The notes beneath the pieces were generated by a model. It ran no database searches. It was not told the DNA's origin and worked only from the letters and a program-made list of their open reading frames with translations. A program made the translations under genes and the position numbers. Positions 7,007 through 21,943 of a stretch of 22,060 nt of DNA are shown piece by piece (the first letter of the stretch is position 1; each line of letters starts with the position of its first letter). The DNA is taken from NCBI GenBank assembly GCA_000388065.2, contig KB932215.1. One strand, given 5' to 3'. The DNA is from Fonticula alba ATCC 38817. Lineage: Eukaryota; Protista; Nucleariida.

Positions 7007-8986
7007 ATGACTGCCCCCCCCCCCCGCCCCGAGGACCATGCAGCCAACCGCCCCGGCCACGGCGGCCTGGCTGCGCTCCGTGATGGGCCCGAGTGCCCCT
7101 TCATTGGCCCGGGCAGCCCCTCTCCTCGATCGGCGGCCCCCCCCCCCCCCCCCCGGGGAGGCTGGTGCACGCCCGCCACCGCCCCGTCTCCCGAGGTGCG
7201 CCGGGCGCCTTTCCCTGCCTGCCCGCGGCACCGCCGGGCCTTGCCCAGCTGCTCGCCGGCCGCCCGGCCCCGAGGTGGCGGCCCTCGCCTTGCGCCGCGC
7301 CCCCGCCCAAATGGGCGCACTGCCGGGGGCGGCGGCCGGCGAGCTCACGGCCCTCGGTGTCCCCCCCGGCCTGTGCGGCAGGCCACGCGAAGGGTGCCCC
7401 GGCCGGGGCTAGCCTGTCCTGAGCCTCGCGCCCTTGCCCGGGGGGGGCGGGGTGCGACCCCCGGCGCCTCCCGGAGCATCGGCCACAGCCCGCCTCCATG
7501 GCAGGGGGGGGGGGGGGGGCGACACATCGCTTCGAGTGTTGGTGGCCCTGTGGTGTTGGCGCAACCACCGTCCCCCCGCCCCTCCCCAGCCCGGGCACCC
7601 GTCGGCTGCGCACGATGCACATCCCGGCCGGTGGCCTGCTCGCCCTGGTGCGGTGGCCTGGCGTGCGTGCCGGCGGGCCGCGGGGCATCGGCCCGCAGTG
7701 GCGACGCCCGCGCGCCCGCCGGCTCGTCATCCCTGGTGCACGCCTTGCACGCTGGGATGCAGCCCGCCCGAGGCGAGTCCCAGGGGGGGGGGGGGGCTGC
7801 CCCGGTGGCCGTGGCCGCCGGAGCATCGGCCGAAAAAGACCACCCCGCCTAGACCGGGCTCCCGGCCGCCGGCGGCACACCCGCACACCTGCCCCATGCG
7901 GCGGTCATCGCGGCCAGTGCTTTGCCGAGTCCGCCCAGGGCAGTCGACCCCGGCATCGAATGCTGCTCACCTCTCTGGGCGCATGGGGCGTTTCGAAGGC
8001 CCACGCGCAGTCGGGTCCTGCTTGTGGCGGACCTGGCCCGGCGGGNNNNNNNNNNNNNNNNNNNNNNNNNNNNNNNNNNNNNNNNNNNNNNNNNNNNNNN
8101 NNNNNNNNNNNNNNNNNNNNNNNNNNNNNNNNNNNNNNNNNNNNNNNNNNNNNNNNNNNNNNNNNNNNNNNNNNNNNNNNNNNNNNNNNNNNNNNNNNNN
8201 NNNNNNNNNNNNNNNNNNNNNNNNNNNNNNNNNNNNNNNNNNNNNNNNNNNNNNNNNNNNNNNNNNNNNNGCCCCCCCCCCTTCGCGCCGCCCGAGGCGA
8301 CTGTCACACCTCCCCAGCCGCGGGCGCAGTGCCCCCCTCTGGGCCCGGATCGGCCCGGTGGAGAGAAGTACACCTGGCTCGCTGGCGCCCGGGCGTGCCC
8401 GGAGCCGCCGCCCGCCCGCCCGCCCGACAATCCTGTGAGCCCACCCGCACAGCGGCCCGGACCCGGACCAGGGCCATCACACCTCGCCCACACGGAGAGC
8501 CGAGGCCCGGGCGGCTGGACCGCCACCTCTGCCCGGCTGCCGCCCGCCTCCCCTGCCAGTGACAAGGCGTCCGCCCCCTCCCTCGCAGGCCATGGGGTGC
8601 CGGGAAGGGCCCCCCCCCCCTCCCCTCCCCGGCCGAGAGACCCCACAAGATCGGTCGCTGGGAGGCGCCAGGGCGCCGCGCCTTTCGAGAGACCGGCCCC
8701 CCGGCCACTCCGCGCGCGGCCGTGCTGGCTCCCCCGCGGTGCGCCTGCCGCTTTTTGTGACACTGCCACAGGTCTCCCGCTTGCCCGCACCAGTGCACCA
8801 AGAGGGCACCCAGAAGGCCAGCAGGGCCAGGCACCGTGCGCGCCCCCCGCGTTTCCATGTTACCGCGGCCACCGTCCCCCCCCCCCCCCCCCCCCCGGGA
8901 GGGCCCCATCCTCTGATACGCGCGCATGCGGCGGAGGGGGGGCAGGGAGAGCGAGAGCTGCTCGCGCGCCCGCCGGGCCAAAATAA
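7007..8986 (+). CDS. Possible spliced Pro/Ala-rich hypothetical gene divergent from UPF1; structure unresolved and spans a gap
   Basis: ATG at 7007, a GAG|GTGCGC donor near 7195 and a TTGCCCAG acceptor near 7249. A long Pro/Ala/Ser-rich frame after the gap ends at TAA 8986 inside an AATAAA. No domain recognised. Confidence 0.2.
8046..8270. other. Assembly gap (other gaps at 2365-2644 and 19796-19930)
   Basis: Runs of N. The two other gaps are flanked by GA-rich repeats. Confidence 1.
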
Positions 8987-16972: not shown

Positions 16973-17033
<61 letters not shown>

Positions 17034-17043
17034 GGAGAGAGAG
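16973..17043 (+). repeat. (GA)n microsatellite
   Basis: About 70 nt of near-perfect GA repeats. Confidence 0.95.
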
Positions 17044-17652: not shown

Positions 17653-17683
<31 letters not shown>

Positions 17684-17695
17684 AATGTACACACA
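17581..17695 (+). repeat. 10-bp tandem repeats (AAGCATACGC/AGGTATACAC)x5 followed by (CA)n, just downstream of the HTH-repeat gene stop
   Basis: Read directly. Confidence 0.85.
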
Positions 17696-17731
17696 CCCAA
17701 CAAACAATCCACACCCCACGCATGGCAGCCG

Positions 17732-19672
17732 TCACATGTATTTCTGATACTCCTTGCTCAGCTTCGCCTTCTCACCACACCGGTGCTTGGCCGGGTCGCC
17801 CGACACCGCCGGCGTCAGCCGCTGAATCGCCTCGAACAGACGCCCACAGGGATGCCGCGCGTAATATGGCAGCTTGAAAGCCTGGCCGATGCCCCGGTGG
17901 TACTTCACCAGCGAGTTGACCACCTGCGGCAGGGCACAGCCCAAATCCGCCGCCAGCTGGTGCAACGGCTCCACGTACGGCCGGTGGATGGCCACATCCA
18001 GCAACATGGGCAGCTTGGCCTCCGGCACGAACATCCCCCCGGGGCCGGACCCGGCCTCCGGGGGCAGGGCCAGGAAAAAGTACTCCGGACAATACCGATG
18101 CAACAGGGAGTACGTCCGATCCGGGCAGAGGACCAATTGCTGGGCAATGTCCCGGACCGTGTGCAACATGCGCCCGCCGGCCGGGTGCACCTGCCCCCCC
18201 AAGCGCCGCAAATGTCGCACCTCCGACTCCGGCAAATCCAACACCACACGCCCGTCCTGCCACAAGCGCCGGCATTCCTCCACCCCGGCCAGGGTCCGGG
18301 CCACTGCTTGGTTTGTTATCCCCAACGACCGGGCCATCTCGGCCTTGGTCAGCGGCGGCCGCAGGCCCGCCGGCCCCAGCAGCTGGTCCACCACCCGGCC
18401 ATCCATCCCCAGGACCAGCGACCGGAGGTCCTGCTCGGCCCTGGCGGCCCCGCGGTCAGCCGGCCGGCAGCCCGGCGCCTCGGGCACCGGCCGATCGCTC
18501 GGACGCACCGGCGACCCGACCGGCAAAAAGCGCCGCGCATAGTCCGAGAAGCTGATGCTGACATCGGCCTTCGGCAGGGACAGATGTCGCACCGGCCGGT
18601 CGTAGTCACCCGGCAGGATGACCGCCGGCTCATAGTACTTGATGTACCACCGGATCCGGGCCACCGAGAGCCTCAACTCGGCCGCCATCTCCCGCAGGCT
18701 CATGCACCGGCTGTGAAGGAGCTCCCGCAGTTGGGTCTGCTTGTTCGGCGACAGTGGCCCCCAATACCGGATGGCATACTCCGCATGCAGGCCGGGCCCC
18801 AGCATATCGATCGCCGGCAGGGACACCCCGGTGGCCTTGGAAATCTGGTACCGCGCAAGGGTCGGCCCCGACACCATCAGCATCTCACGCAGGGCATCCA
18901 TCTGGGCCTGCGGCCTCGGTGACACCAGCACGTCCCGATGCTCGGGCATGTGCTTCTGCAGGGCAAGCGACAATTGCCGCCACGACACCGACAGCATGAT
19001 GGCCATCTGGTCGATGGACAGCCGCGGCACCACGGCCATCAGCTGCCGCAGCCGAGACAGGCACACATGCTCGTCGGTGGCCAAGTCCGGCAGATGGGCC
19101 TTCAGCAGGGGATTCACCCGGGCCAGGGGCAGCCGCAGCAGCCGTGCCAGGGTGATGCCCAGCACCGGCGGGGCCCGCTGGGCCAGCGCCAGCAGATCCT
19201 CGAGCACCGGGTCCCCGGGGCCCACCCCCGGCGACTTGGCCCTCGATGGCCACGGCCCCGGCGCGATCCCATACTCCCAGCCATACTCCACCAGGAGGAC
19301 CCTCGTCGAGGCCCGGTCCAGGCCCATCAGCCGGCCGACAGTCCCGATGGGGACTATCGGCTCCTGGCTCTTCGGCGGCCCGGCCAGCCGCAACAGCAGC
19401 CGGAAGTGCGACACATCGTCAAATCCCTGCGGCAGGGGAACCCGCCCGGACTCGATGTCCCGGCAGAGGCGCTCCCCGGCACAGAGACCCTCCCGGTCAG
19501 CCGCGGCCTGGGCATCTGCCCTGCGGGCGGCGGGGGCGGCGGGGGCGGCGGGGGGGGCGGGGGCGGTGGAGGAAAGCCACGCGCGCTCGGCGCCGGTCAT
19601 CGCCGCCACCCCGAGCCCGGGCTCCGGGGGCGTCGGCCGCCGCCACCATGCTCGGCCAATGTGAGCAAGCAT
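17732..19672 (-). CDS. Intronless 646-aa protein with about eight tandem helix-turn-helix-like repeats and a putative mitochondrial targeting presequence
   Basis: Uninterrupted ORF with strong codon bias from MLAHIGRAWWRR to EYQKYM*. Recurring pattern ls/txx(E/D/Q)(M/I/L)Axx(L)g(V/L/I)sxxx(V/I)xxxLxx(Y/H)xP, e.g. LSIDQMAIMLSVSWRQLSLALQKHMP, MSLREMAAELRLSVARIRWYIKYYEP, LTKAEMARSLGITNQAVARTL, HTVRDIAQQLVLCPDRTYSLLHRYCP. The CDS call is firm; the fold call is by pattern only. Confidence 0.85.
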   Translation of the reverse strand: MLAHIGRAWWRRPTPPEPGLGVAAMTGAERAWLSSTAPAPPAAPAAPAARRADAQAAADREGLCAGERLCRDIESGRVPLPQGFDDVSHFRLLLRLAGPPKSQEPIVPIGTVGRLMGLDRASTRVLLVEYGWEYGIAPGPWPSRAKSPGVGPGDPVLEDLLALAQRAPPVLGITLARLLRLPLARVNPLLKAHLPDLATDEHVCLSRLRQLMAVVPRLSIDQMAIMLSVSWRQLSLALQKHMPEHRDVLVSPRPQAQMDALREMLMVSGPTLARYQISKATGVSLPAIDMLGPGLHAEYAIRYWGPLSPNKQTQLRELLHSRCMSLREMAAELRLSVARIRWYIKYYEPAVILPGDYDRPVRHLSLPKADVSISFSDYARRFLPVGSPVRPSDRPVPEAPGCRPADRGAARAEQDLRSLVLGMDGRVVDQLLGPAGLRPPLTKAEMARSLGITNQAVARTLAGVEECRRLWQDGRVVLDLPESEVRHLRRLGGQVHPAGGRMLHTVRDIAQQLVLCPDRTYSLLHRYCPEYFFLALPPEAGSGPGGMFVPEAKLPMLLDVAIHRPYVEPLHQLAADLGCALPQVVNSLVKYHRGIGQAFKLPYYARHPCGRLFEAIQRLTPAVSGDPAKHRCGEKAKLSKEYQKYM

Positions 19673-20411
19673 CGGAGCGGGCGCGGGCGGGACAAAGAAA
19701 AGTGCGTGGCGCGGTCGCGAGACCGAGAGACCGTCAATCGGGAGGGGTCGGCCCGCGAGGGGAGACAGAGACAAAGAGAGAGGGGGAGAGAGAGANNNNN
19801 NNNNNNNNNNNNNNNNNNNNNNNNNNNNNNNNNNNNNNNNNNNNNNNNNNNNNNNNNNNNNNNNNNNNNNNNNNNNNNNNNNNNNNNNNNNNNNNNNNNN
19901 NNNNNNNNNNNNNNNNNNNNNNNNNNNNNNNGAGAGGGGGAGAGAGAGAGAGAGGGGGGGGGAGGGAGAGACAGAGAGACAGAGAGGGAGAAAAGAGGGG
20001 GGAGAGAGGGAGAATGGATGATCGGGCTGTGCCGTAACAGCACAAGTCATGCCCGTGTCCCAAGACCAACACCGTGAACGGGCTCCCCCTTGCGCGAGCC
20101 CCCCACCCCGGCCCCAGCGGATCGACGAGAGTGTGGCAACGCCCGGACCCCACAGGGCGCTCCCTCCCCCGGCCTGCCGGCTTGCCGGGATATGCGTGGC
20201 GCGCGGCGGAGATGGCGCGCGGCGGTAGCAAGCTGCCCACGGACGCTACTGCCCACGCTTCGGGCTGCATGCCACTCGATCACAGCCCGCGCCCGGACCT
20301 CCGCGCCCGGACCTCCGGCGAATGCCGCGCCTGCCGCCTGCGCCCCTTTCTCACCCCGTGAACAGAGATGGCAGGGTGGTATCGGCGAAGTACAAAGAGG
20401 CTCGATCCCCG

Positions 20412-21943
20412 CTACCGGTCCATGTCGTGCGACTTGCCGACCATCCCTCGAAGGAGATCGACCGCCACCCGCAGGCCGAAGCCGAGGTTGAAGCCGGCCG
20501 CCATGGCCGGATAGGCCAAGCACCAGACCCAGGCGGCCAGCCGGCCGGCCAGCATGCCGATCGGCAGCCGGCCCGTGGGGGGCCTCGCCGCCGCTGCCGG
20601 GCAGGCCCCACTGGGCGCCATTTCCGCCGGGAGGCTGCCACCAGATGCCATGTCGGCCGGGGGATGCGGCCCGGGGACGGCCGGCGGGCTGGCCATGGCG
20701 CCGGAACCCGCGTCGCCGCCGGCCACCACCGACCCCGGCACCGTGACAAAATCCACCACCGCCTCCTGGCAGGGCCCGCGCCGGGTGCCGAGCCCGCACA
20801 GGAAGCCCCGATGCACATACCGGAAGGGGCCCGGCCGCCGGGCGTACGAGGAGAACACTGCATCGGCACATGGCGCACATCGGTCAGCAAAGCCCAACCG
20901 GAGCAGGGGCGAGAAGGGAAAGGCCCCGGCAAAGGGCCCGGGATGGGCGCCTGCGCACCTTGCCCAAGGTAGACCCCATGGTGCTTGGCCAGCTGGGCGG
21001 ACATGGGCCAAGGCCCGGCCGCCGGGTCCAAGGGGGCCGCGCTGTCGCCGGCCACGAAGATCCCCCGGTCGACCGTATGCCCGCCGGCCATGACCTCGCC
21101 ACTGGCATCCACCGCCGGGGCCATGCTGTCGCCCTCGGCGTCGCCCGGCTCCATAACGGCTCGCAGGAAGCTGCATTCCCCACGCGACCGGTCAGTATAT
21201 CGCACGCGCGGCATCCATCCAATCCAGGGCCCGGCTCCATGTGGGGGTATATACACACATACTTGCACACATGCATGCATGTACACATGCACACATGCAT
21301 GCATGTACACATGCACACATGCATGCATGCACACATGTGCACATACTCGCACACATACTCGCACACATATACACACATACATACATACACACACATATAC
21401 ACAAAATACACTCTCTCTCTCTCTCACACACGCACCCGTCCACCAGCAGACGCCCAGTTCGCGGCTCACGCCGGAAACAGCGGTCCAACGAATGGACCAG
21501 CTCCGCGGGCTGGTTGCCGGCGGCCCAGATCAGCAGCCCGCATGCCAGATGCCGCTCCGCAGCTTGCTCGGCCCCGGCCGCGATCGCATCGCGTGCACTC
21601 GCCGGACGCAGCACCACCCGGATGGCCTGGTCCGCCCGGGCCCCCGGGCGATCTCCATCCCCCGCACCGCTGGCCGGAGGCGGGCCCGAACATCCGCCGG
21701 GCCCCGGGCCGCTGTCGGCCTCGCCCGGACCAAGGACCCGGACCACGCGGCTGCCGAGATGCAGGCGGATGTTCGGGCTGCGGTCCGGGTCCCGGAGGAG
21801 CTCCAACACCCGCTGGCGCAGCGCCGGCCCCAGCGTCGCATTGCCCAGCACGCAGGTGCCCGGATCCACCAGGTGCACCCGGGCCATGTCGGCCAGCTCC
21901 CGGCCAAAGGTCGGCCCCGCATACCGCGCCACGAAGGCCTGGA
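20412..21943 (-). CDS. Type II NADH:quinone oxidoreductase (NDH-2, NDE1/NDI1-like), 3' part; exons 21943-21436, 21170-20959, 20857-20412; 5' exons lie outside the window
   Basis: Spliced product reads RVHLVDPGTCVLG..IRLHLGSRVVRV..LLIWAAGN..GRLLVDG|FLRAV..GIFVAGDSA..WPMSAQLAKHHGVYLGQ|V..PFRYVHRGFLCGLG..EAVVDF..LAGRLAAWVWCLAY..LRVAVDLLRGMVGKSHDMDR*. This is the canonical NDH-2 C-terminal motif order, including the membrane-anchor helices. Phase-consistent GTGCG..CAG introns with CTGAC branch points. Confidence 0.88.
21250..21432 (+). repeat. Compound alternating purine-pyrimidine repeat (24-mer CACATGCATGCATGTACACATGCA x~3, CATA/CA runs, (CT)n) filling an NDH-2 intron
   Basis: Read directly within intron 21435-21171. 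Confidence 0.9.

What the first reader, a model, noticed from the sequence alone, without database searches (positions are those of the whole stretch)
17897..19417. Octa-HTH array protein with a mitochondrial-type presequence: candidate new organellar nucleic-acid-binding repeat family
Seen in sequence: eight units, each an amphipathic helix, a Pro/Gly turn, then an HTH-like pair, spaced about 45-65 aa apart with one longer linker. R1 aa86-131 DVSHFRLLLRL..VPIGTVGRLMGLDRASTRVLLVEYG; R2 156-195 VLEDLLALAQRAPPVLGITLARLLRLPLARVNPLLKAHLP; R3 204-243 LSRLRQLMAVVPRLSIDQMAIMLSVSWRQLSLALQKHMP; R4 257-293 MDALREMLMVSGPTLARYQISKATGVSLPAIDMLGP; R5 311-349 QLRELLHSRCMSLREMAAELRLSVARIRWYIKYYEP; R6 413-463 DLRSLVL..PPLTKAEMARSLGITNQAVARTLAG; R7 484-529 EVRHLRRL..LHTVRDIAQQLVLCPDRTYSLLHRYCP; R8 553-592 KLPMLLDVAIHRPYVEPLHQLAADLGCALPQVVNSLVKYH. 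Established knowledge: this A(5)-G(9)-hydrophobic(10,15) spacing is the signature of tri-helical HTHs (sigma70 region 4, AraC, AsnC-type). Inference: a modular DNA/RNA reader analogous to mTERF, PPR or TALE arrays but built from bacterial-style HTHs. I do not recognise it as a named family.
Basis: partly seen in the sequence, partly recalled or inferred. Interest (0 to 1): 0.78.

Follow-up and report, generated by a model that had tools for sequence, protein, structure and literature searches.

The report
Fonticula eight-module HTH array protein
This intron-free gene of the amoeba Fonticula alba encodes a basic protein made of eight small DNA-gripping helix-turn-helix modules behind a leader that looks like a mitochondrial import signal. 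It belongs to an undescribed family of about twenty genes seen only in this species, and what it binds is untested.

Summary
Units resemble each other by profile comparison (up to 96% probability; reversed controls at most 3%). Single units superpose on transposase, Myb and MarR-type HTH domains (Z 5-5.6, about 2 A).

The organism is Fonticula alba. About 21 gene models form the family, several in tandem pairs. A profile search of 1.84 billion proteins and a metagenome scan found no relative outside this species. The only weak hits were prokaryotic multi-HTH arrays. No paper describes the family.

The mitochondrial leader is plausible but unproven. Most paralogues start ML/MF, have Arg-rich, acid-free leaders, and end in R-x-F-S-S. 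In this gene that needs the upstream Met (19672), not the annotated one (19600).

R1, R7 and R8 are conserved and R3-R6 vary. Codon models give omega 0.2-0.8, so the genes are constrained but evolve fast.

The "organellar modular reader" idea is the best guess, not a result. This scan had already met the same family on other pieces of this genome. It is a new variant of a known kind (HTH).

The parts
17732..19672 (-). Whole coding sequence: 646 codons plus stop, no intron. The public annotation starts at the second Met (19600, 622 aa).
   Evidence: (P0001 100% identical over 622 aa)
19568..19672 (-). Putative import leader, aa 1-35 (MLAHIGRAWWRR...ERAW-LSS). It exists only with the upstream start codon.
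   Evidence: paralogues share the ML/MF start, Arg-rich acid-free leaders and an R-x-F-S-S motif
19418..19489 (-). Conserved N-terminal motif, aa 62-85 (AGxRLCRxIExGxxPLPQGFDD)
19268..19417 (-). HTH unit R1 (aa 86-135), conserved among paralogues
19082..19210 (-). HTH unit R2 (aa 155-197)
18938..19063 (-). HTH unit R3 (aa 204-245), variable third helix
18773..18910 (-). HTH unit R4 (aa 255-300), variable
18620..18748 (-). HTH unit R5 (aa 309-351). It gives the best cross-unit matches and a weak Pfam HTH_24 hit at aa 317-345.
18437..18619 (-). Linker, aa 352-412. Its first half is conserved (VxLP..PVRQL..LTLxEYxRRFLPxxSPV) with short predicted strands. Its second half has low confidence and is variable.
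18278..18394 (-). HTH unit R6 (aa 427-465), the most variable third helix; weak Pfam HTH_Crp_2 hit at aa 436-463
18080..18229 (-). HTH unit R7 (aa 482-531), conserved
18020..18088 (-). Near-invariant segment PEYFFLALxPEAGSGPGGM[YF]VPE (aa 529-551) between R7 and R8; predicted loop of low confidence
17885..18022 (-). HTH unit R8 (aa 551-596). It is the most conserved unit (LHQVAADLGCxLPQVVNSL) and is not similar in sequence to R1-R7.
17735..17884 (-). C-terminal tail (aa 597-646), helical, weakly conserved, low model confidence

Best explanation
A nuclear, intron-free gene of Fonticula alba encodes a basic (pI about 9.6) protein that is a string of eight tri-helical helix-turn-helix modules. 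It is one of about twenty paralogues made by local and dispersed duplication within this lineage.

Shown: the eight-module architecture, the internal homology of units R1-R7, the HTH fold of single units, the restriction of the family to F. alba in every collection searched, and purifying but weak constraint.

Inferred: the protein is imported into the mitochondrial matrix through an N-terminal Arg-rich leader that ends at an R-x-[FWL]-(x)-S-S processing-type motif. There it binds nucleic acid (mtDNA or mt transcripts) along an extended surface. The conserved end modules (N-motif plus R1, and R7 / PEYFFLAL loop / R8) would do a job common to all paralogues, such as docking to a shared partner or sequence. 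The variable central modules R3-R6 would give each paralogue its own target. On this reading the family plays the part that PPR, OPR or mTERF-type repeat proteins play in other lineages.
For: Architecture: AF2 secondary structure; unit-unit hhalign against a reversed control; unit HMMs detect up to 12 units in the 900-aa paralogue H696_00212.

Fold: in VIA-align, almost every top match to a single unit is an HTH or wHTH DNA-binding domain. Examples are Mos1, SETMAR, Tc3, Myb R2R3, Ada, Tn3 resolvase and MarR/IclR, at Z 5.0-5.6, rmsd 1.7-2.8 A over 43-51 aa. Pfam HTH families reach gathering score in paralogues.

Nucleic-acid binding: pI is 8.9-10.6 in all members.

Family and restriction.

Leader: 13 of 15 leaders have no acidic residue and 4-6 basic residues in the first 30 aa, and 11 of 15 carry the R-x-hydrophobic-S-S/T/Q motif. 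This count uses in-frame upstream Mets that restore a conserved MLxSR..RALRAW start in three members. Among 12 neighbouring non-family genes, 1 carries the motif and 4 are acid-free.

Conserved ends and variable centre.

Constraint: intact ORFs in all members read; ML codon omega is 0.24 overall and 0.17 in R7-R8.
Against: No localisation predictor or experiment was available. In a genome with GC3 near 0.9, Ala/Arg/Pro/Gly-rich, acid-poor N-termini arise easily.

This gene's own leader is short, holds two Glu, and depends on an unannotated start codon whose -3 base is C.

The divergent 900-aa paralogue starts with a KRPR stretch that looks like a nuclear signal rather than a presequence.

HTH domains mostly bind double-stranded DNA in nuclei and bacteria. 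Nothing here tells DNA from RNA or names any target.

Structural Z-scores of 5-6 are ordinary for small helical domains (tool note). Foldseek gave nothing at E <= 0.001.

No region shows omega > 1, so there is no signature of target-driven diversification.

Transcription is not proven. The four small 2012 runs that hold the gene are only guessed to be RNA.
Confidence: 0.45

Rival explanations
1. Nuclear sequence-specific DNA-binding factors: a lineage-specific transcription-factor or chromatin family. It may derive from the DNA-binding heads of IS630/Tc1-mariner-type transposases or from acquired prokaryotic multi-HTH genes. The N-terminal leaders would be compositional low-complexity sequence, not import signals.
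For: The best Pfam and structural resemblances are to transposase/paired-type HTHs: HTH_23, HTH_32, Mos1, SETMAR, Tc3. The divergent paralogue H696_00212 starts with a KRPR-containing, non-presequence N-terminus. The genes lack introns while about half of their neighbours have them. The genome is very GC-rich, which favours Arg/Ala-rich termini.
Against: No DDE or other catalytic domain is present. Similarity between paralogous loci stops at the coding sequence. The leader start (MLxSR..RALRAW) and the R-x-F-S-S motif are conserved across paralogues whose leaders otherwise diverge, which is hard to explain as junk. No NLS is evident in the eight-unit subfamily.
Confidence: 0.3
2. A protein-protein scaffold or other function without nucleic acid: degenerate HTH bundles reused as a helical repeat platform, for example an assembly or adaptor factor, in whichever compartment.
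For: In this protein the HTH matches are all sub-threshold. Several third helices are not notably basic: R4 has net charge -1 and R8 has 0. The most conserved piece is a Gly/Pro-rich loop (PEYFFLAL..GSGPGGMYVPE) rather than a recognition helix.
Against: The whole protein and all paralogues are strongly basic. Unit geometry (8-residue helix, 3-residue turn, 11-residue helix) is kept in all eight units. Paralogues reach Pfam thresholds for DNA-binding HTH families.
Confidence: 0.15
3. A decaying or selfish repeat family without present function: relics of a mobile element or of a burst of duplications drifting neutrally in gap-rich, repeat-rich parts of the assembly.
For: Simple Nei-Gojobori dN/dS is 0.74-1.19. 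There are many fragmentary or split gene models. Loci are rich in N gaps and several lie near scaffold ends.
Against: All eight coding sequences read are free of stops over 471-689 codons. Codon-frequency-aware ML gives omega 0.24 overall, 0.17 for R7-R8 and 0.5-0.8 in the youngest trio, all below 1. The Nei-Gojobori values are inflated by GC3 of 0.8-0.9. Invariant motifs persist at 40-45% identity. Most 'partial' models are cut by assembly gaps.
Confidence: 0.07

Closest known systems
Bipartite HTH DNA-binding heads of Tc1/mariner/IS630 transposases and the paired domain (Pfam HTH_23, HTH_32, HTH_Tnp_IS630; structures Mos1 3hos, SETMAR 7s03, Tc3 1u78)
   Same: Small three-helix bundle with an H2-turn-H3 motif. 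Single units superpose at Z 4.7-5.6 and rmsd 1.7-2.9 A. Paralogues reach the HTH_23 gathering score.
   Different: Those have two HTHs followed by a DDE catalytic domain and sit in elements with inverted repeats. Here there are eight units, no catalytic domain and no element-like flanks.
Prokaryotic and phage multi-HTH array proteins (TniQ/TnsD-type plus HTH repeats, HNH_3 plus HTH repeats, IS630-HTH arrays, Bacteroidota DUF7317/HTH_23/HTH_7 arrays)
   Same: Many HTH units in a row. They are the only non-Fonticula hits of the family profile (E 1e-10 to 1e-3, 2-7 matched stretches each) and the nearest ESM Atlas look-alikes.
   Different: The similarity is generic HTH similarity summed over repeats. 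They carry TniQ, HNH or DUF7317 heads that are absent here. They lack the family's N-motif, the PEYFFLAL loop and the P-E-Y unit endings. Atlas scores are below 0.9 and so are leads only.
Myb/SANT repeat arrays (c-Myb R1R2R3, plant R2R3-MYB, Reb1/Ttf1 terminator proteins)
   Same: Eukaryotic tandem tri-helical HTH repeats that read DNA along the major groove. Unit matches: 6kks Z 5.3, 1mbg Z 4.7, Reb1 5eyb Z 4.8.
   Different: No Pfam Myb_DNA-binding hit. The regularly spaced Trp core was not looked for. Unit length is 45-60 aa with a fourth short helix. Those proteins are nuclear.
Organellar helical-repeat nucleic-acid binders (PPR, OPR, HPR, mTERF)
   Same: By inference only: a nuclear-encoded, expanded, fast-evolving family of basic helical-repeat proteins with import-type leaders.
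   Different: The repeat fold is different: those use 30-38 aa two- or three-helix repeats that form a solenoid. Pfam finds no match to any of them. No recognition code, target or localisation is known here.
SelB C-terminal four winged-helix array (1lva, 2uwm) and UFL1/DDRGK1 winged-helix repeats
   Same: They are the top, though non-significant, Foldseek rows for the whole model. They set a precedent for tandem wH/HTH modules that bind RNA or the ribosome.
   Different: E-values are 0.3-1 and TM 0.1-0.3. There is no sequence relation.

Membership tests
Tri-helical HTH (homeodomain-like / HTH_23-type) superfamily, per unit | Three-helix bundle with helix 2, a tight 3-4 residue turn and recognition helix 3 | tested here: met
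   AF2 gives an 8-aa H2, a 3-residue turn and a 9-15 aa H3 in all eight units. Top VIA matches are HTH domains at about 2 A over 43-51 aa, with modest Z of 5-5.6.
Tri-helical HTH (homeodomain-like / HTH_23-type) superfamily, per unit | Sequence match to a curated HTH model at its gathering score | tested here: inconclusive
   Window protein: best 18.4 bits against a cut-off of 27. Paralogues pass at equivalent units (HTH_23 35.3, 28.4 and 25.5 vs 24.6; Sigma70_r4 24.4 vs 24.1).
Tri-helical HTH (homeodomain-like / HTH_23-type) superfamily, per unit | Binds nucleic acid through helix 3 | not testable with these tools
   Only a basic pI is available; there are no binding data.
IS630/Tc1-mariner transposase | DDE/DDD catalytic domain after the HTH head | tested here: not met
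   No transposase catalytic family in Pfam for the query or eight paralogues. The whole length is taken up by HTH units and linkers.
IS630/Tc1-mariner transposase | Element structure: similar non-coding ends or inverted repeats around the copies | tested here: not met
   blastn similarity between four paralogous loci is confined to the coding sequences. At 65-75% identity, older flanks could have faded.
mTERF | About 30-aa mTERF motifs (Pfam PF02536) forming a left-handed superhelix | tested here: not met
   No Pfam hit even at E up to 10. Units are 45-60 aa HTH bundles.
PPR / OPR / HPR organellar repeat proteins | 35-38 aa helical-hairpin repeats matching PPR, OPR or HPR models | tested here: not met
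   No such Pfam family for the query or paralogues. The repeat anatomy differs.
Myb/SANT repeat proteins | Match to Myb_DNA-binding with regularly spaced Trp residues | tested here: not met
   No Pfam Myb hit. The resemblance is structural only. Trp spacing was not examined.
Mitochondrial matrix proteins with a cleavable presequence | N-terminal Arg-rich, acid-poor amphipathic leader with an R-2/R-3 processing motif (established knowledge of MPP/Icp55 sites) | tested here: inconclusive
   Family-wide features fit and beat 12 neighbouring genes. This gene needs the upstream Met and has two Glu in its leader. No trained predictor was available.
Mitochondrial matrix proteins with a cleavable presequence | Observed mitochondrial localisation or leader cleavage | not testable with these tools
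   No proteomic or imaging data.
Prokaryotic TniQ/TnsD- or HNH-headed multi-HTH arrays | TniQ, HNH_3 or DUF7317 head domain before the HTH repeats | tested here: not met
   These domains are present in hits P0022, P0026, P0027, P0029 and P0030 and absent from the Fonticula proteins.

The most novel reading that the evidence does not exclude
Fonticula alba has evolved its own class of organellar gene-expression factors. About twenty or more matrix-targeted proteins are built from HTH modules rather than PPR, OPR or mTERF repeats. Each reads a specific mitochondrial DNA or RNA site through its variable central modules and docks through conserved end modules. This would be an independent invention of the 'modular nucleic-acid reader' on a different fold.
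Probability: 0.25. Interest if true: 0.8.

Novelty: new variant of a known kind. Interest (0 to 1): 0.55.

Why it matters
Expanded families of helical-repeat proteins that read organellar nucleic acids (PPR, OPR, HPR, mTERF) have arisen repeatedly, and they have given both biology and programmable tools. A family that does this with classic HTH modules would be a further, independent solution on a fold normally tied to double-stranded DNA. It would be found in a lineage next to fungi, and its eight to thirteen or more modules per protein could in principle specify long sites.

Even if the proteins prove to be nuclear, a species-restricted, fast-evolving family of about twenty multi-HTH genes with no catalytic domain is an unusual case of de novo family expansion or domestication in a protist. 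The caveat is that only architecture and distribution are shown. Compartment, ligand and function are all inferred.

Tried and rejected
- **Foldseek of the whole 585-residue model and of R3-R5 against the PDB:** nothing at E <= 0.001, only tandem wH/HTH proteins at E 0.3-4.
- **Profile of the family against all PDB sequences:** nothing below E 0.4.
- **NCBIfam:** nothing.
- **Scan of JGI metagenome contigs with the two most conserved peptides:** 204 pattern matches, none a relative.
- **Word search with the 900-aa, 13-unit paralogue:** found only itself.
- **Literature searches:** no description of the family.
- **Nei-Gojobori dN/dS:** it gave 0.74-1.19 and briefly suggested neutrality or positive selection. 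I rejected it as an artefact of GC3 0.8-0.9 after codon-model ML gave 0.17-0.40 by region. No region or helix class stands out, so there is no support for diversifying selection on recognition helices.
- **Subtelomeric location:** several members lie within 2-40 kb of scaffold ends, but no telomere-type repeats were found. The ends are assembly gaps. Left open.
- **A shared 369-aa upstream neighbour of two members:** in L003 it turned out to be the C-terminal half of a split tandem paralogue, and in the window it is an unrelated gene.
- **Reads:** the only runs that hold the gene are four small 2012 runs of unrecorded type, kept as contigs. They cover 17724-19520 but cannot prove transcription or map the 5' end. 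Read laying was given 2,011 letters.
Full report
**What is there.** The window is very GC-rich (0.63-0.79), so all six frames hold long spurious ORFs. One ORF stands out by its protein-like sequence: minus strand, 17732-20050. The part upstream of 19672 is translated (CT)n microsatellite and crosses a 136-N gap (19796-19931), so it is not coding. The public annotation starts at the next Met (19600) and gives 622 aa; P0001 is 100% identical. The gene has no intron (1869 nt for 622 codons plus stop). The finding's coordinates 17897-19417 cover only units R1 to R8.

**Organism and family.**
- The word search found eight full-length relatives at 35-46% identity, all 'hypothetical protein' of Fonticula alba.
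- A profile of the family was scored against 1.84 billion representative proteins. Every hit below E 1e-20 is again F. alba. In all there are about 21 gene models, several of them fragments cut by assembly gaps.
- Some members sit as tandem neighbours: H696_05857/05858, 05959/05961 and 06059/06061, the last with a split copy.
- A divergent 900-aa member (H696_00212) has about 13 very clean units, most ending ..R.[CF]P[ED][YF].
- A metagenome scan with the two invariant peptides found no relative. A word search with the 900-aa member found only itself.
- The remaining profile hits (E 1e-10 to 1e-3, 2-7 stretches each) are prokaryotic multi-HTH arrays with TniQ, HNH_3 or IS630-type heads. The ESM Atlas look-alikes are Bacteroidota and phage multi-HTH proteins, scoring below 0.9.
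- I found no paper on the family.
- Earlier notes of this same scan describe the family on other pieces of this genome, including members of 1,213 and 1,559 aa. They agree with what I found independently.

**The repeats are real and are HTH.**
- AlphaFold2 on the nine-sequence alignment (pLDDT 71.7, pTM 0.54) predicts the same triplet eight times: helix of 8-13 aa, loop, helix of 8 aa, 3-residue turn, helix of 9-15 aa.
- The R3-R5 fragment with 15 sequences is confident (pLDDT 87.7, pTM 0.67). It shows a short fourth helix over the P-E-H / A-E-Y endings of R3 and R4.
- In profile-profile comparison of the units, 8 of 28 pairs score above 80% probability. The best are R5-R7 at 96.4%, R1-R2 at 93.6% and R5-R6 at 93.5%. 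Of 56 comparisons with reversed units, none exceeds 3.1%.
- R8 is the exception. It is HTH by predicted structure but unrelated in sequence to the others.
- VIA-align of the R3-R5 model against 48,161 PDB representatives gives, for single units, a list made almost only of HTH and winged-HTH DNA-binding domains: Mos1, SETMAR, Ada, R2R3-Myb, Z-alpha, Tn3 resolvase, Tc3 and MarR/IclR. Z is 5.0-5.6 and rmsd 1.7-2.8 A over 43-51 residues.
- These Z values are modest, as the tool warns, and Foldseek finds nothing significant. The fold assignment therefore rests on the agreement of four things: geometry, the uniform list of matches, Pfam hits that reach gathering score in paralogues, and the multi-stretch hits to bona fide HTH arrays.
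- In the window protein itself Pfam stays sub-threshold.

**Leader and start codon.**
- The N-termini are not alignable as a whole, but they share features.
- Three members (P0004, P0005, P0008) have in-frame upstream Mets. These restore a start MLVSR/MFASR...RALRAWGSPAL that matches the annotated start of P0010.
- With these starts, 13 of 15 leaders have 4-6 Arg/Lys and no Asp/Glu in the first 30 residues. Most begin ML or MF. Eleven carry R-x-[FLAMIW]-(x)-S-[STQ] some 20-75 residues in. By established knowledge of MPP/Icp55 sites, this resembles the R-3 processing motif.
- Among 12 neighbouring non-family genes, one has the motif and four are acid-free, and two of those four look like signal peptides.
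- In the window gene the motif is RAW-LSS at aa 30-35. It can only be part of a leader if translation starts at 19672 (MLAHIGRAWW, which resembles MLxSR..RAW).
- Against this, the leader holds two Glu, and the -3 base of the upstream ATG is C while that of the annotated ATG is G.
- No predictor, proteomics or imaging was available, so import into mitochondria is plausible but not shown.

**Pattern of conservation and selection.**
- Among ten full-length members, the N-terminal motif plus R1, and R7 / PEYFFLALxPEAGSGPGGM[YF]VPE / R8, are conserved. Helix means are 0.55-0.75 for R1 and 0.64-0.89 for R7-R8.
- R3-R6 are variable. R6 helix 3 scores 0.27, R4 helix 2 scores 0.31 and R3 helix 3 scores 0.38.
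- All eight coding sequences I could read are intact.
- Nei-Gojobori dN/dS is 0.74-1.19, but GC3 is 0.78-0.92.
- Codon-model ML gives omega 0.24 overall, 0.17 for R7-R8, 0.25-0.33 for R2-R6, and 0.5-0.8 in the youngest trio depending on the model.
- The genes are therefore under purifying but weak constraint. No region or helix class shows omega above 1.
- All members are basic, with pI 8.9-10.6.

**What it most likely does.** The best-supported reading is a nucleic-acid-binding array. Its conserved ends would serve a function common to the family, and its variable middle would differ in target between paralogues. The family-wide leaders make the mitochondrial matrix the most likely compartment. 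By analogy with PPR, OPR and mTERF families, that suggests gene-specific roles in mitochondrial DNA or RNA transactions.

Every step beyond architecture is inference. I put the whole chain at 0.45, mitochondrial import alone at roughly 0.55-0.6, and nucleic-acid binding at about 0.8.

The rivals are:
- a nuclear DNA-binding family, perhaps from domesticated transposase heads or acquired prokaryotic arrays (0.3);
- a scaffold that does not bind nucleic acid (0.15);
- a functionless decaying family (0.07; intact ORFs, invariant motifs and omega below 1 argue against it).

**Comparison with known kinds.** The unit is a member of the tri-helical HTH class at the fold level. The protein is not a transposase, since it has no catalytic domain and no element-like flanks. 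It is not an mTERF, PPR, OPR or Myb protein, since it matches none of their models and its repeat anatomy differs. It lacks the head domains of the prokaryotic arrays it weakly resembles. The eight-unit architecture with its N-motif, P-E-Y unit endings and PEYFFLAL loop is undescribed. I rate it a new variant of a known kind.

**Expression.** Four small runs of 2012, kept as about 11.5 Mb of contigs each and with library type not on record, hold the gene from 17724 to 19520. Their size is closer to a transcriptome than to a genome of this organism, but that is a guess, and contigs cannot show starts or strand. They differ from the assembly at two places. At 19173, G>T changes Ala167 to Asp or Glu, where the family consensus is RDPPV. 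At 19488, C>T changes Gly62 to Asp or Glu.

**Constraints observed.** Read laying was given 2,011 letters. Nothing in the window looked human, and no step needed referral.

Noticed in passing
window 19173 and 19488: All four read-derived contig sets differ from the assembly. At 19173, G>T changes Ala167 to Asp or Glu, and the family consensus there is RDPPV. At 19488, C>T changes Gly62 to Asp or Glu. Either the assembly has errors or the strains differ.
   Followed up: partly
window 19600 vs 19672: The public gene model starts at the second Met. Comparison with paralogue leaders favours the upstream Met. The annotated starts of three paralogues (H696_06163, 06112, 02545) also look truncated, because in-frame upstream Mets restore a conserved MLxSR..RALRAW leader.
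   Followed up: yes
window 16973-17043, 17656-17700, 19932-20013; N gaps 2365-2644, 8046-8270, 19796-19931: (GA)n and (CA)n microsatellites bracket the gene. The (CA)n run begins about 30 nt after the stop codon, and a (GA)n/(CT)n run borders the upstream assembly gap. A GGC-type 9-nt repeat at 19525-19566 encodes the Ala/Pro run of the leader.
   Followed up: partly
window 17783-18922, 18938-20077 (+ strand) and other frames: ORFs of 300-380 aa lie antisense to and overlapping the gene. They are Arg/Pro/Gly-rich and are best explained by the scarcity of stop codons at about 70% GC. They are not evidence of overlapping genes.
   Followed up: no
window 20412-21887 (- strand): The upstream neighbour is called as a 369-aa protein with introns and has no Pfam family. 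It is unrelated to the HTH family. The equal length of the gene upstream of paralogue H696_06061 is a coincidence; that one is the C-terminal half of a split tandem paralogue.
   Followed up: partly
L002 2927-8231 and L007 12526-13944: Large Cys-rich VSP/furin-like/GF_recep_IV repeat proteins lie next to two different family members. Several family members lie within 2-40 kb of scaffold ends in gap-rich sequence, and no telomere repeats were found there.
   Followed up: partly
L002 13150-15100: The 'partial' 516-aa model H696_05858 continues. tblastn similarity to the family runs on to about 15063, so the gene is probably full length and was cut short in annotation.
   Followed up: partly
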